64,000 nucleotides of DNA from Euprymna scolopes (GCA_053919585.1 CM132798.1); one strand, 5' to 3'; positions 23,130 through 58,972 are shown, numbered from the stretch's first letter. Numbers and translations: made by a program. The notes: generated by a model from the letters alone, not told the origin.

Positions 23130-23739
23130 TTGATCTTGTAACACTATACGTCCCTTCGGTATTTATCTAGCTTACACAATTAACACCCAATTACTATCCG
23201 CCCCTAGAATTCAACCCTTCACATTAATTCTCCCACTATGCCTCAACATAACCTACATTGCGTTTAAGCACTGATATTATCTAAGACACTCCTATCTATA
23301 AATCCACACACATAGCATAAACCGCCTATTTAATGTAAATCCCTCTCAATACGTACAACACATATGCACATTGGTTAAACTGAGTAACTTCTTTCAACCA
23401 AACTACCACATATCCCTGCTGAGATTTTAAGCAGACACACTGCCCACTTGCGTTAGGCCTACTGTTAAAAATGGTCTATATACAGGCATCCATTACACAA
23501 TGCAAACATCCATTACACAATGCACACTACATTCATCCTATATCAGAGAAATCACAGGTAGCTCCTCCAGATAGGCTTAATAGTCTATTTTGCTCCCAAT
23601 GATACTACCACTAGAAGTCGCATACCTATCATATTACATAGCGGCTTCTCCACTCTGCTGATGAGAAGCATTATGCTTCGAAATTTCATGGCATAAAGAG
23701 TTTCCACTTACCCGACACCCTAAATAAATGTGCACTCTA
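23130..23739 (+). mobile_element. Decayed Penelope-like element 3' end (GIY-YIG trace + pseudo-LTR with hammerhead)
   Basis: Trace of a YKIPC..C..YIG.T-like sequence at ~23330-23385, followed by a hammerhead motif and aataaa before the gap. Confidence 0.55.
23652..23701 (+). ncRNA. Type I hammerhead ribozyme motif (probably decayed)
   Basis: ACTCTg-CTGATGA-GAAGCA-tta-TGCTTC-GAAA-tttcatggc-ATA-aAGAGT: intact core boxes, perfect stem II, stem I ACTCT/AGAGT with a core-proximal mismatch, weak stem III. Confidence 0.65.
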
Positions 23740-50913: not shown

Positions 50914-50998
<85 letters not shown>

Positions 50999-51175
50999 AG
51001 ATAAAATTAAAAGCCAAGAACAATGCGAGATTTTTTTTTTATATATAGAGTAAAATTAAATGCAAACAAAAGAAATAAAATTCTTTTTTTTGTTGTTTGT
51101 TTTTTCTTTTTCACACAAATTTTAACTCTAAACAACAGTATTTTTTTTTTCTGTTGTATTCAATGGTGTTGTAAA

Positions 51176-51215
51176 TCTCAATATATTTCAGACTTATTAG
51201 TCCATTTTCAAGAGA
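51176..51215 (-). ncRNA. Minimal type I hammerhead ribozyme (U3-A8 variant) in the 3' pseudo-LTR
   Basis: Exact reverse complement of 52344-52383. Confidence 0.75.
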
Positions 51216-52343
51216 AGACAGCGGAAGAGTGTTCAAAATTGGAAAAGTAGCCGCAGAGTTTGCCACGTGATACCGCGAAATATAGAACAAAAAATGACGT
51301 TAGGAGAACGTTAAAATAAATCAGTTGATGTTTGAAATACTTGTTGCGTTTGTGAATCAAGGGAGATGACTATTCAAGCAAGGTTTTTTTTTTTAATTAT
51401 TGTTTTTCTTATGTTTTAAACTTATATTATAAAAGCGGAGCTACATTCCAGTCTATTGTTTAATGTGGGAGTATTTTTTGAAATAGTTAAAGATTCGAGG
51501 ATACGAAGTTGACCTACGTTTCTTGAAGAAGCAAGAATGTTGATGTGAAAATCTGGTTCTGAATTAATGCAAGTGCGAATATGTTTATAGAACGACGAAG
51601 CAGTAGTGTTTAAGTGCTCTTTAATGCGGTGATGAAGCAATCTGGTAGTGCTTCCGATGTAAGATGCACTGCATTTGGCGCATTGTAGGTCGTAAACAAC
51701 GTGGTTCTTAAAGCATAAACCTGTGTGTGATATTGGGCAATTAGAGAGTGAACAAGGGGAAGGTGTATGCGATGGATGTTTTCGGTTGAGCTGTTGTCTT
51801 AAAGTAGATCCAGTGTGGATGAGTTGAATGTTGAGCCCCTCGCTGCGGATGGCTTTTCGGATTGAAGATGAGATTTTGTCACTGAGGAAGGGTAGTTTTA
51901 GAAAACAATTGTTAGAGAAGGGTCGGGTGTTGCGTTTTTTTCTTTTTAAGTGAGGATAGGATCGTATTAGGGTAGCCGTTTAGTGAGAGGGTCTGTAGGA
52001 AATTGTTAGTGTGTGTATGTTTGTCGGAGATGTTAGTGCATTTGTCTTGTATGCGTGAGATTTCGGCATGTGCGTAGTTTAGTTTGTCCTTGAGAGGTAG
52101 CGCAGATTTGAAATGTACGAAGAGGCGTTTGCTGGCGGGTTTTCTGTAGAATTCAGTGCATATAAAAAAAAAACACCTTGCTTGAATAGTCATCTCCCTT
52201 GATTCACAAACGCAACAAGTATTTCAAACATCAACTGATTTATTTTAACGTTCTCCTAACGTCATTTTTTGTTCTATATTTCGCGGTATCACGTGGCAAA
52301 CTCTGCGGCTACTTTTCCAATTTTGAACACTCTTCCGCTGTCT

Positions 52344-52383
52344 TCTCTTGAAAATGGACTAATAAGTCTGAAATATATTGAGA
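52344..52383 (+). ncRNA. Minimal type I hammerhead ribozyme (U3-A8 variant) in the inverted pseudo-LTR
   Basis: TCTC-TTGAAAA-T-GGACT-aata-AGTCT-GAAA-TATA-TT-GAGA: stem I TCTC/GAGA, stem II GGACT/AGTCT, palindromic ATATAT stem III. Confidence 0.75.
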
Positions 52384-52601
52384 TTTACAACACCATTGAA
52401 TACAACAGAAAAAAAAAATTACTGTCGTTTAGAGTTAAAATTTGTGTGAAAAAGAAAAAAACAAACAACAAAAAAAAGAATTTTATTTCTTTTGTTTGCA
52501 TTTAATTTTACTCTATATATAAAAAAAATCTAGCATTGTTCTTGGCTTTTAATTTTATCTTATAATTTTCTTCAACAATGCTTCAAGCAAATTACAACCT
52601 A

Positions 52602-52655
<54 letters not shown>

Positions 52656-52674: not shown

Positions 52675-52990
52675 TTTGCTGTATCACAGCACATCAGTGG
52701 TGCTTAACAGGCAACTACTTTAAGCCAGGATCGAAACTCGACTATCCAAACGGGCATTACACCATAAGGCTGCAACTGTGCGTTTATTGAATTTACGATG
52801 TTTTAACATCATCCAAATGCTAAAGCTTGATTTTTTCACCAAGAGCATCGCTAATAGAAGATCGTATATCACTACACAATATGCTCAACCCCCATCCACA
52901 TACAATAATATTTCGCTGCATCACAGATAATCAGTACTACTCCTACCTAAAGTCAGGATCGAAACCCAACAGACCAAACGAAAGTCAAAA
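52675..52990 (-). repeat. Two ~227-bp-spaced units with tRNA/SINE-like B box
   Basis: atcacag...aag.caggatcgaaac.c.ac...ccaaacg at ~52684-52752 and ~52920-52980. GTTTCGATCC on the minus strand. Runs into a gap. Confidence 0.55.
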
Positions 52991-57945: not shown

Positions 57946-58082
57946 TTAGTAAGTTATAAAATGTATATGGCGATAAAGCTACACTGAATATTTCGCGTTT
58001 CATCCACTATGTGCGCCTGAAGAGTCCTAGAGTGGATGAAACGCAGAATATTCAGTGTAGCTTAATCGCCATATACATTTTA

Positions 58083-58093
<11 letters not shown>
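57946..58093. repeat. Long hairpin (~63-bp arms, 22-nt spacer) containing a hammerhead-like core
   Basis: 57946-58008 is nearly the reverse complement of 58031-58093. CTGAAGA-GTCC-tagagt-GGAT-GAAA-CGC at 58017-58044. Confidence 0.85.
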
Positions 58094-58602: not shown

Positions 58603-58972
58603 AATTTATTTATTGTGGACTATTTCCTCATCTTTCTTAGTTGTTGTTTAACGATGTTTCGGCCAACTATTCATCTGGCCTTCGTCAGGTTGTAGCCGCG
58701 ACTGCATATTGACTCAGAATCTTTTAACTGTATTACCTAGAATTACTACTATCAATAGTTGCTGTTGTCTCACCACGTTTTGGCCAAGTAAACCTCTGGC
58801 CGACTTTGGGAAGTATTGCAACCGCTATCTTAAGACAATTCTCATCTGGCACCGTAGAGATTCAACCTCTATATCCACTACGCTTTGGGGCCCGAAGCCC
58901 AGAGGAATAGTCGGCCGAAACCTCGAGAAACAAAAACGTAGAAATATGAGGATAATAGTGCGCAATAAATAA
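58603..58972. mobile_element. ORF-less inverted pseudo-LTR mini-element (PLE-derived) with hammerhead motif
   Basis: ~58605-58685 and ~58893-58972 are diverged inverted repeats. The minus strand 58693-58649 reads ACAAC-CTGACGA-A-GGCCA-gatgaatagt-TGGCC-GAAA-CATC-GTT. Confidence 0.7.

What the first reader, a model, noticed from the sequence alone, without database searches (positions are those of the whole stretch)
50995..52563. Very young Penelope-like element whose inverted pseudo-LTRs each carry a minimal U3-A8 variant hammerhead
Seen: ~400-bp near-identical inverted arms flank an almost intact thumb + GIY-YIG coding segment with one A-run frameshift. Each arm has TCTC-TTGAAAA-T-GGACT-aata-AGTCT-GAAA-TATATT-GAGA. 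Known: PLE pseudo-LTRs carry minimal hammerheads, the C3-G8 core pair can covary to U3-A8, and a palindromic stem III suggests dimeric cleavage. Inference: this is a recently active family whose ribozyme a strict CTGANGA search would miss. Because the arms are inverted, a read-through transcript from either strand would carry one sense ribozyme and could fold into ~400 bp of dsRNA, a possible endo-siRNA source.
Basis: partly seen in the sequence, partly recalled or inferred. Interest (0 to 1): 0.75.

Follow-up and report, generated by a model that had tools for sequence, protein, structure and literature searches.

The report
Penelope retroelement pair with variant hammerhead
This is an ordinary, very recent insertion of a highly repeated Penelope-like jumping gene in a probable cephalopod genome: two truncated copies lie head to head, and each carries a small hammerhead-ribozyme motif with a U3-A8 core swap that was already published in 2014.

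Summary
The arms, 50995-51397 and 52162-52564, differ by 4 substitutions and 3 homopolymer indels. The interior codes on the minus strand for the post-palm region plus the GIY-YIG endonuclease, and it has one extra A in an A-run. The quoted 40-nt motif is present in both arms.

The interpretation needs two corrections.

- **Structure.** This is not one element with inverted pLTRs. It is two 5'-truncated copies (1,167 nt and 445 nt) joined head to head inside a (TA)n microsatellite. The right copy runs on to 52606 and includes the ORF start, which is the PLE "tail". Among the first 100 genome-wide motif hits, 30 close pairs are head to head and none has the opposite orientation.
- **Novelty.** PLE minimal hammerheads with an unpaired base before helix II, a palindromic loop III and a U3-A8 core were described by Cervera and De la Pena (2014).

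The motif is not a chance match: my descriptor gives 0.007 hits per simulated window. Sister lineages change it only at the unpaired base or in ways that keep pairing. Whether it cleaves RNA is untested. A sister family with a U3.G8 core is even more abundant, so efficient cleavage may not be needed for spread.

This scan has already reported the same thing on other DNA of this genome (s1-288505, s1-280711).

The parts
50914..50994 (.). (TA)n microsatellite, left half of the insertion target
   Evidence: 33 of 35 family 3' ends examined abut (TA)n.
50995..52161 (-). Left copy: 5'-truncated PLE copy of 1,167 nt (post-palm region, GIY-YIG EN, stop codon, inter-ORF pLTR). Its 3' end is at the 'short' site (unit position 264).
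   Evidence: 98.4-99.2% identical to other copies over the interior
51915..52160 (-). Open frame for the RT post-palm ('thumb'-like) region, upstream of the frameshift
   Evidence: Corresponds to residues after the RVT_1 match of the longer copy in L031. Homologous clusters carry PF26215.
51935..51941 (-). A-run with one extra A relative to 12 other copies; it shifts the frame
51425..51979 (-). Open frame with linker and GIY-YIG endonuclease (the C, C, H, H residues are readable); stop codon at 51422-51424
50995..51397 (-). pLTR (inter-ORF region) of the left copy; this is the left inverted arm
51176..51215 (-). Hammerhead-type motif of the left copy, in sense with its ORF. The predicted cut is between 51180 and 51179 on the minus strand.
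52162..52606 (+). Right copy: 5'-truncated PLE copy of 445 nt (pLTR plus tail), head to head with the left copy. Its 3' end is at the 'long' site (unit position 308).
52344..52383 (+). Hammerhead-type motif. Helix I 52344-47/52380-83. Core U3 U4 G5 A6 A7 A8 A9 at 52348-54. Unpaired U at 52355. Helix II 52356-60/52365-69 (the closing pair is G.U). G12 A13 A14 at 52370-72. A15.1 at 52373, UAUA, U16.1 at 52378. U17 at 52379.
52565..52606 (+). 'Tail': 42 nt present only at this end, holding the element's ATG (52578) and its first codons
   Evidence: Craig et al. 2021
52604..52653 (.). (TA)n microsatellite, right half of the insertion target

Best explanation
The region 50995-52606 is one insertion event of a young, abundant, canonical (C-terminal GIY-YIG) Penelope-like element into a (TA)n microsatellite.

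How it arose (inferred from anatomy and published biochemistry): the element's endonuclease cut both strands of the target. Each DNA end primed reverse transcription at an internal UUAUA site of the element RNA, one 12 nt before the ATG and one 30 nt after it. The two incomplete cDNAs, 1,167 nt and 445 nt, were then joined 5' end to 5' end. The 'inverted pLTRs' are the 3' parts of these two copies.

The motif (shown at sequence level): each copy carries, about 200 nt upstream of the ATG position and in sense, the lineage's minimal type I hammerhead motif. It is a true homologue of published PLE hammerheads, with the published U3-A8 core covariant.

Likely role (inferred, about even odds): in tandem copies (pLTR-ORF-pLTR, unit about 3,030 bp) and in the 256-bp tandem arrays derived from this element, two motifs pair through the AUAUAU palindrome. 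Probably with help from the element's protein, they then cut multimeric transcripts after U17. In this head-to-head copy the ORF is frameshifted and only one sense ribozyme lies on any transcript, so the motif here is a passive relic.
For: Protein identity:
- RVT_1 plus GIY-YIG lie on one strand of the longer copies, and GIY-YIG lies in the window.
- The nearest named protein is from Octopus bimaculoides, at 50% identity.
- Atlas neighbours are animal RT/GIY-YIG clusters.

Architecture:
- The 35-nt motif has 1,050 exact genome hits against 0 for the reversed control. Among the first 100 rows there are 30 close (-,+) pairs, 0 (+,-) pairs and 4 same-strand pairs about 3,030 bp apart.
- 3' ends fall at two discrete unit positions, 264-266 and 308. 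33 of 35 are followed by (TA)n, and each of 6 pairs has one short and one long end.
- This matches published PLE features: an adjacent inverted 5'-truncated copy, a 30-40 bp tail at one end, a (TA)n bias, cleavage and extension of both target strands, and internal initiation.

Motif:
- It is the only descriptor hit in the window, against 0.007 expected.
- The isolated 40-mer folds into helices I and II as its minimum-energy structure.
- Across 8 lineages of the same element the motif varies at only 3 positions: the unpaired base (U/A), U-A to U.G, and G.U to G-C. All three keep pairing.
- At least 10 different fully complementary helix II sequences occur in the same frame across families.
- Genome census of core states in that frame: C-G 2,834, U.G 4,963, U-A at least 3,658, and the non-pairing C/A only 263, all scattered.
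- Helix I of 4-5 bp, an unpaired base between positions 9 and 10.1, a palindromic loop 3 and the U3-A8 core are all in Cervera and De la Pena 2014.
Against: - No cleavage or expression data could be obtained.
- Rfam hammerhead models give no match even at E<=10.
- The closing pair of helix II is G.U here, not the conserved G10.1-C11.1.
- In 71-nt and 141-nt contexts another fold is more stable than the hammerhead fold.
- A distantly related PLE family (endonuclease about 29% identical) with a U3.G8 wobble core is the most abundant of all.
- Published work shows that catalytic hammerhead mutants do not impair PLE insertion in vitro, and that hammerhead-free PLEs proliferate well. Cleavage may therefore be dispensable.
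- Within the young subfamily the motif is no better conserved than several other 40-nt stretches of the pLTR.
- My descriptor was written after I had seen the motif, although from published features.
Confidence: 0.85

Rival explanations
1. The motif descends from a hammerhead but no longer works as a ribozyme in this lineage. It persists because it is part of the RNA region that the reverse transcriptase needs (binding or folding), or simply because the family is too young to have lost it.
For: - The U3.G8 sister family is the most abundant.
- The closing pair of helix II is G.U here.
- A competing fold is more stable in context.
- Catalytic mutants do not affect PLE insertion in vitro, and no RNA ends were seen at the cut site in Anolis.
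- Hammerhead-free Naiad PLEs thrive.
- The 256-bp derivative arrays keep the motif together with the ORF start, where the reverse-transcription start sites lie.
Against: - Only pair-capable 3/8 states found large families; C/A does not.
- Lineage differences keep helix II paired.
- All other core positions and the palindrome are intact in 1,050 copies.
- From my own knowledge, U3-A8 is isosteric with C3-G8 and such double mutants retain activity.
Confidence: 0.35
2. One reading: a single element framed by inverted pseudo-LTRs. Its read-through transcript folds into about 400 bp of dsRNA and feeds an endo-siRNA pathway, or ADAR editing.
For: The arms are about 99% complementary over about 403 nt, so any transcript spanning both would form a long hairpin. 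Hairpin-derived small RNAs are known in other animals (my own knowledge).
Against: The structure is a by-product of the insertion mechanism. It is found at dozens of loci with arbitrary inner junctions, so it is not a designed feature. No evidence of transcription across this locus could be obtained.
Confidence: 0.1
3. The hammerhead resemblance is a chance match in AT-rich sequence, or the inverted repeat is an assembly artefact.
For: The sequence is AT-rich (window GC 32%). Helix I has 4 bp and helix II has 5 bp, including a G.U pair. Rfam finds nothing.
Against: The descriptor expectation is 0.007 per window. There are 1,050 identical copies against 0 in the control. The same architecture recurs in families with unrelated helix II sequences. 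The head-to-head layout recurs on many chromosomes.
Confidence: 0.02

Closest known systems
Minimal hammerheads of metazoan Penelope-like elements, including the U3-A8 variant of Schistosoma mansoni Cercyon (Cervera and De la Pena 2014, PMC4209133)
   Same: Type I motif in the pLTR. Helix I of 4-5 bp. An unpaired base between A9 and 10.1. A palindromic helix III or loop 3, implying a dimer. U3-A8 in place of C3-G8. Motif pairs on opposite strands a few hundred bp apart. Thousands of copies per genome.
   Different: The host is probably a decapodiform cephalopod, and I found no paper describing these motifs there. Helix II is only 5 bp and closes with G.U in this subfamily. All copies are nearly identical, as in D. 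virilis and unlike the variable schistosome sets.
Canonical PLE insertion architecture (Evgen'ev and Arkhipova 2005; Craig et al. 2021, PMC8557442)
   Same: 5' truncation, partial tandems forming pLTRs, an adjacent inverted 5'-truncated copy, a 30-40 bp tail at one end, and microsatellite (TA)n targets.
   Different: Nothing essential. Here the tail is 42-44 nt and both 3' end sites are UUAUA sequences that match the (TA)n target.
PAc (Poseidon of Anolis carolinensis) in vitro system (Frangieh et al. 2024, PMC11167929)
   Same: Cleavage and extension of both target strands, AT-rich targets, reverse transcription starting inside the RNA near the ORF start, and a hammerhead at the pLTR-ORF junction region that needs protein to cut.
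   Different: PAc has a C3-G8 core and its hammerhead overlaps the start codon. Here the motif lies about 200 nt upstream of the ATG. Nothing here was tested biochemically.
Animal non-LTR retrozymes (Cervera and De la Pena 2020, PMC7229834; Li et al. 2026 preprint)
   Same: The 256-bp tandem arrays that carry this same hammerhead (L068, L070-72, L075) look like retrozymes derived from a PLE pLTR.
   Different: The window element itself is a coding PLE fragment, not a retrozyme. The arrays keep the first 75 nt or so of the ORF.

Membership tests
Penelope-like element (C-terminal EN+) | Reverse transcriptase followed by a C-terminal GIY-YIG endonuclease in one ORF | tested here: met
   The window holds GIY-YIG (E=2.7e-4, just under the Pfam cut-off). 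A longer copy has RVT_1 and GIY-YIG in one 335-aa frame. Family copies have open frames of 863 aa. Homologues carry RVT_1, PF26215 and GIY-YIG.
Penelope-like element (C-terminal EN+) | pLTRs formed by partial tandems | tested here: met
   There are same-strand motif pairs about 3,030 bp apart. L031 shows a partial upstream pLTR, then the ORF, then the pLTR.
Penelope-like element (C-terminal EN+) | Adjacent inverted 5'-truncated copy | tested here: met
   The window has copies of 1,167 and 445 nt head to head. Genome-wide there are 30 (-,+) pairs and 0 (+,-) pairs in the first 100 hits.
Penelope-like element (C-terminal EN+) | 30-40 bp tail at one end; microsatellite or AT-rich target | tested here: met
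   The ends fall at unit positions 264-266 or 308. Each of 6 pairs has one of each. 33 of 35 ends abut (TA)n.
Penelope-like element (C-terminal EN+) | Clade assignment (Penelope/Poseidon, Neptune, Nematis, Hydra) | not tested
   No phylogeny was made. The linker has C-x4-C but not an obvious CxxC.
Hammerhead ribozyme, PLE minimal type I | Core U4 G5 A6 N7 A9, G12 A13 A14, A15.1-U16.1, H17 | tested here: met
   Read directly at 52349-52379.
Hammerhead ribozyme, PLE minimal type I | Position 3 pairs with position 8 (C-G, or the published U-A covariant) | tested here: met
   U52348 and A52353. U3-A8 was described in 2014. The canonical C-G state is not present.
Hammerhead ribozyme, PLE minimal type I | Helices I and II flank the core, with an unpaired base between A9 and 10.1 | tested here: met
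   Helix I has 4 bp and helix II has 5 bp, with U52355 unpaired. This is the minimum-energy fold of the 40-mer, but not of longer contexts.
Hammerhead ribozyme, PLE minimal type I | Conserved G10.1-C11.1 pair | tested here: not met
   The window has G52356.U52369. Sister lineages (L070-72, L075) have G-C.
Hammerhead ribozyme, PLE minimal type I | Palindromic helix III or loop 3 that allows a dimer | tested here: met
   AUAUAU at 52373-52378. Other families have ACGU, AGCGCU or AGGCCU.
Hammerhead ribozyme, PLE minimal type I | Match to curated covariance models (Rfam hammerhead families) | tested here: not met
   No hammerhead match at E<=10 in 3 kb or in 81 nt.
Hammerhead ribozyme, PLE minimal type I | Site-specific self-cleavage after position 17 | not testable with these tools
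No biochemistry was possible.
Hairpin-RNA endo-siRNA locus | Transcription through both arms and small RNAs from the stem | not testable with these tools

The most novel reading that the evidence does not exclude
In this genome the hammerhead 3-8 pair occurs as a natural series. C-G, U.G and U-A are each the founding state of families with thousands of copies, while the non-pairing C/A never founds a family. Selection would then act on pairing at 3-8, with a wobble intermediate, even in elements where fast self-cleavage seems dispensable. The 256-bp arrays derived from this very element would define the minimal RNA its reverse transcriptase can mobilise: the hammerhead plus the two start sites around the ATG.
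Probability: 0.3. Interest if true: 0.5.

Novelty: new member of a known kind. Interest (0 to 1): 0.22.

Why it matters
For annotation: this family, with at least 1,050 intact motifs and a 3.03-kb unit, is young enough to cause assembly and gene-model problems, and its derivatives share that risk. Its hammerhead escapes Rfam, so ribozyme counts in cephalopod genomes are underestimates.

For biology: it adds a mollusc example to the known link between Penelope-like elements, minimal hammerheads and retrozymes. It also offers a clean parent-and-derivative pair for testing what PLE reverse transcriptases recognise. It does not open a new question by itself.

Tried and rejected
- **Rfam scans**: no hammerhead match. 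I take this as a limit of the models for minimal PLE motifs, not as evidence against the motif.
- **Conservation within the subfamily**: 1 substitution in 1,240 motif sites against 63 in 11,725 elsewhere (Fisher p=0.03). Several other 40-nt stretches are just as clean, and the copies are the best-scoring ones, so I give this little weight.
- **Counting lineage variants that break or keep pairs:** too few events for a meaningful test, so I did not pursue it.
- **A covariance model built from other families of this genome:** rejected as circular, because those instances were selected with a pattern that shares helix I and the core with the query.
- **Chance match and assembly artefact:** both considered and rejected.

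Full report
**What is there**

The window has two arms, 50995-51397 and 52162-52564, that are reverse complements of each other. The repeat finder reports 258 nt at 99% and 79 nt at 97%. A gapped alignment gives about 403 shared positions with 4 substitutions and 3 homopolymer-length differences.

The 764 nt between the arms code on the minus strand.
- One frame (51915-52223) holds the region after the RT palm.
- The other (51425-51979) holds a linker and a GIY-YIG domain (PF01541, E=2.7e-4, 21.6 bits against a cut-off of 22.6). Its stop codon is at 51422-51424.
- The two frames are offset by one extra A in the A-run at 51935-51941, relative to all 12 other copies compared. Otherwise the interior is 98.4-99.2% identical to those copies.

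**What the structure really is**

A longer copy elsewhere (L031) shows the unit. A pLTR carries the motif, the ATG lies about 200 nt downstream of the predicted cut site, and an ORF of about 860 aa follows. The ORF has a weak RVT_1 match and GIY-YIG, and then the pLTR comes again.

In the window the right arm does not end at 52563. It continues to about 52606 and contains that ATG (52578) and the first codons. Read in the sense of the ORF:
- The left part (52161 down to 50995) is a 1,167-nt 5'-truncated copy.
- The right part (52162-52606) is a 445-nt 5'-truncated copy of the same element on the other strand.
- Their 5' ends meet at 52161/52162.
- Their 3' ends point outward into (TA)n on both sides (50914-50994 and 52604-52653).

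This layout is the rule for the family.
- The 35-nt motif has 1,050 exact matches in the 5.9-Gb genome and none for the reversed control.
- In the first 100 rows there are 30 close pairs in the (-,+) order, none in the (+,-) order, and 4 same-strand pairs about 3,030 bp apart, which gives the unit length.
- Inner junctions differ from locus to locus.
- The 3' ends fall at two discrete unit positions, 264-266 (12 nt before the ATG) and 308 (30 nt after it). Both are UUAUA sequences.
- 33 of 35 ends are followed by (TA)n, and each of six pairs has one short and one long end.

These are the published marks of PLE insertions: an adjacent inverted 5'-truncated copy, a 30-40 bp tail at one end, and (TA)n targets (Craig et al. 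2021). The Anolis PLE protein cuts and extends both target strands and starts reverse transcription inside the RNA near the ORF start (Frangieh et al. 2024).

I therefore read the 'inverted pseudo-LTRs' as the product of priming from both ends of one target break. This is an inference from anatomy plus that biochemistry. It was not shown here.

**Host and age**

- The nearest named protein is an uncharacterised Octopus bimaculoides protein at 50% identity. With 5.9 Gb in 925 contigs and numbered contigs up to at least C46, a decapodiform cephalopod is likely but unproven.
- The best-matching arms are 97-98% identical with gaps, and about 99.5% identical at substitution level.
- The two arms of this insertion differ at 1% of sites.
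- Several family copies have open frames of 863 aa. I do not single any out.
- The family is thus very young and may still be active.

**The motif**

In standard numbering the motif reads as follows:
- Helix I: 52344-47 with 52380-83 (4 bp).
- Core: U3 U4 G5 A6 A7 A8 A9 at 52348-54.
- An unpaired U at 52355.
- Helix II: 52356-60 with 52365-69 (5 bp; the closing pair is G.U).
- G12 A13 A14 at 52370-72.
- A15.1 at 52373, UAUA, then U16.1 at 52378.
- U17 at 52379, with the predicted cut after it.

*Chance.* I wrote a descriptor from published PLE features: helix I of at least 4 bp, 0-1 unpaired base, helix II of at least 4 bp, GAAA, a palindrome and H17. It hits only these two places in the window, and simulated windows give 0.007 hits. 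I wrote it after seeing the motif.

*Folding.* The isolated 40-mer folds into helices I and II as its minimum-energy structure (-5.7 kcal/mol). In 71-nt and 141-nt contexts another fold wins.

*Rfam.* It finds no hammerhead even at E<=10.

**Comparative evidence inside the genome**

*Lineages of the same element.* These are autonomous copies 93-97% identical (L069, L074) and 256-bp tandem arrays made of the pLTR from about 18 nt upstream of the motif to about 75 nt into the ORF (L068, L070-72, L075). In the motif they differ at only three positions:
- the unpaired base (U or A);
- the inner pair of helix II (U-A to U.G);
- the closing pair of helix II (G.U to the canonical G-C).

All three changes keep pairing. 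By my rough estimate that has about a 2% chance, so the evidence is modest.

*Across families.* The same frame occurs with at least ten unrelated, fully complementary helix II sequences and with different palindromes. 14 of 25 sampled instances close with at least 5 pairs, against 4.6% with at least 4 pairs after shuffling.

*Census of core positions 3/8 in one common frame:*

| Core state | Hits | Reversed control |
|---|---|---|
| C-G | 2,834 | 2 |
| U.G | 4,963 | 12 |
| U-A, unpaired base not U | 2,608 | 28 |
| U-A, this subfamily (exact 35-mer) | 1,050 | 0 |
| C/A (cannot pair) | 263 | 20 |

The C/A hits are scattered decay products of several families. So the three states that can pair each found large families, and the one that cannot pair does not.

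The motif class is real, and this motif belongs to it.

**What remains open is function**

Several points argue against a need for efficient cleavage:
- The U.G family, whose endonuclease is only about 29% identical to ours, is the most abundant.
- The closing pair of helix II is G.U in our subfamily.
- A competing fold is more stable in context.
- Catalytic mutants do not impair insertion in vitro, and no RNA ends were seen at the cut site in Anolis.
- Hammerhead-free PLEs proliferate well.

Within the young subfamily the motif has 1 substitution in 1,240 sites against 63 in 11,725 elsewhere (p=0.03).

My best guess, at about even odds, is dimer-dependent and protein-assisted cutting of multimeric transcripts from tandem copies and from the 256-bp arrays. 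At this locus no two sense motifs share a transcript and the ORF is frameshifted, so the motif here is a relic.

**Comparison with what is known**

Cervera and De la Pena (2014) already described each of these features:
- minimal hammerheads in PLE pLTRs, with helix I of 4-5 bp;
- an unpaired base before helix II;
- a palindromic loop 3 and a dimer model;
- low activity in vitro;
- pairs of motifs on opposite strands 100-700 bp apart;
- a U3-A8 core covariant, with about 1,300 hits in Schistosoma mansoni.

That is the only paper in the library using the term U3-A8 with hammerhead. I found no paper describing these motifs in cephalopods.

Earlier notes of this scan on other DNA of the same genome reach the same conclusion (s1-288505, s1-280711). 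My tests agree with them.

**Limits**

- For both reasons I could not make cross-species comparisons or inspect the older sister families.

**Verdict**

This is a correct observation of an ordinary thing: a new member of a known kind.

Noticed in passing
L039-L067 (e.g. L062:2285-2323); genome-wide: A second, very abundant and young PLE family (endonuclease about 29% identical to this one) carries the same motif frame but with a U3.G8 wobble core. It has helix II GCCCG/CGGGC and the palindrome ACGU. The frame gives 4,963 pattern hits against 12 in the control, nearly all from this family. Its A8 variants also occur.
   Followed up: partly
L068:1040-4921; L070, L071, L072, L075: Tandem arrays with a period of about 256 bp (16 units in L068). 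Each unit is this element's pLTR from about 18 nt upstream of the hammerhead to about 75 nt into the ORF, minus 62 nt. This is a retrozyme-like non-coding derivative of the same PLE. Some arrays have the canonical G10.1-C11.1 pair.
   Followed up: partly
L001-L030: The family's 3' ends fall at only two sites (unit positions 264-266 and 308). Both are UUAUA next to the (TA)n target, and each head-to-head pair has one of each. This suggests start sites set by microhomology with the nicked microsatellite.
   Followed up: partly
window 23658-23685 (+), 58017-58050 (+), 58653-58688 (-): Three further hammerhead-like cores (CUGANGA, a helix II of 4-6 bp, then GAAA) from other families. The one at 58017 lies inside the palindromic element at 57946-58093 that was noted earlier on this window (s1-288691).
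   Followed up: no
window 52715-52752 and 52943-52980: Two 38-nt segments, 79% alike and 228 bp apart, just right of the insertion. They contain a tRNA B-box-like GGATCGAAAC, possibly heads of the tRNA-type short elements reported elsewhere in this genome.
   Followed up: no
genome-wide: Many C3/A8 hits are CUGACGA cores turned into CUGACAA. This is decay at a CpG, which fits methylation-driven loss of the core in old copies.
   Followed up: no
genome-wide: The first-look scan finds 15,395 candidate GIY-YIG matches in the genome, so PLEs are a major repeat class here.
   Followed up: no
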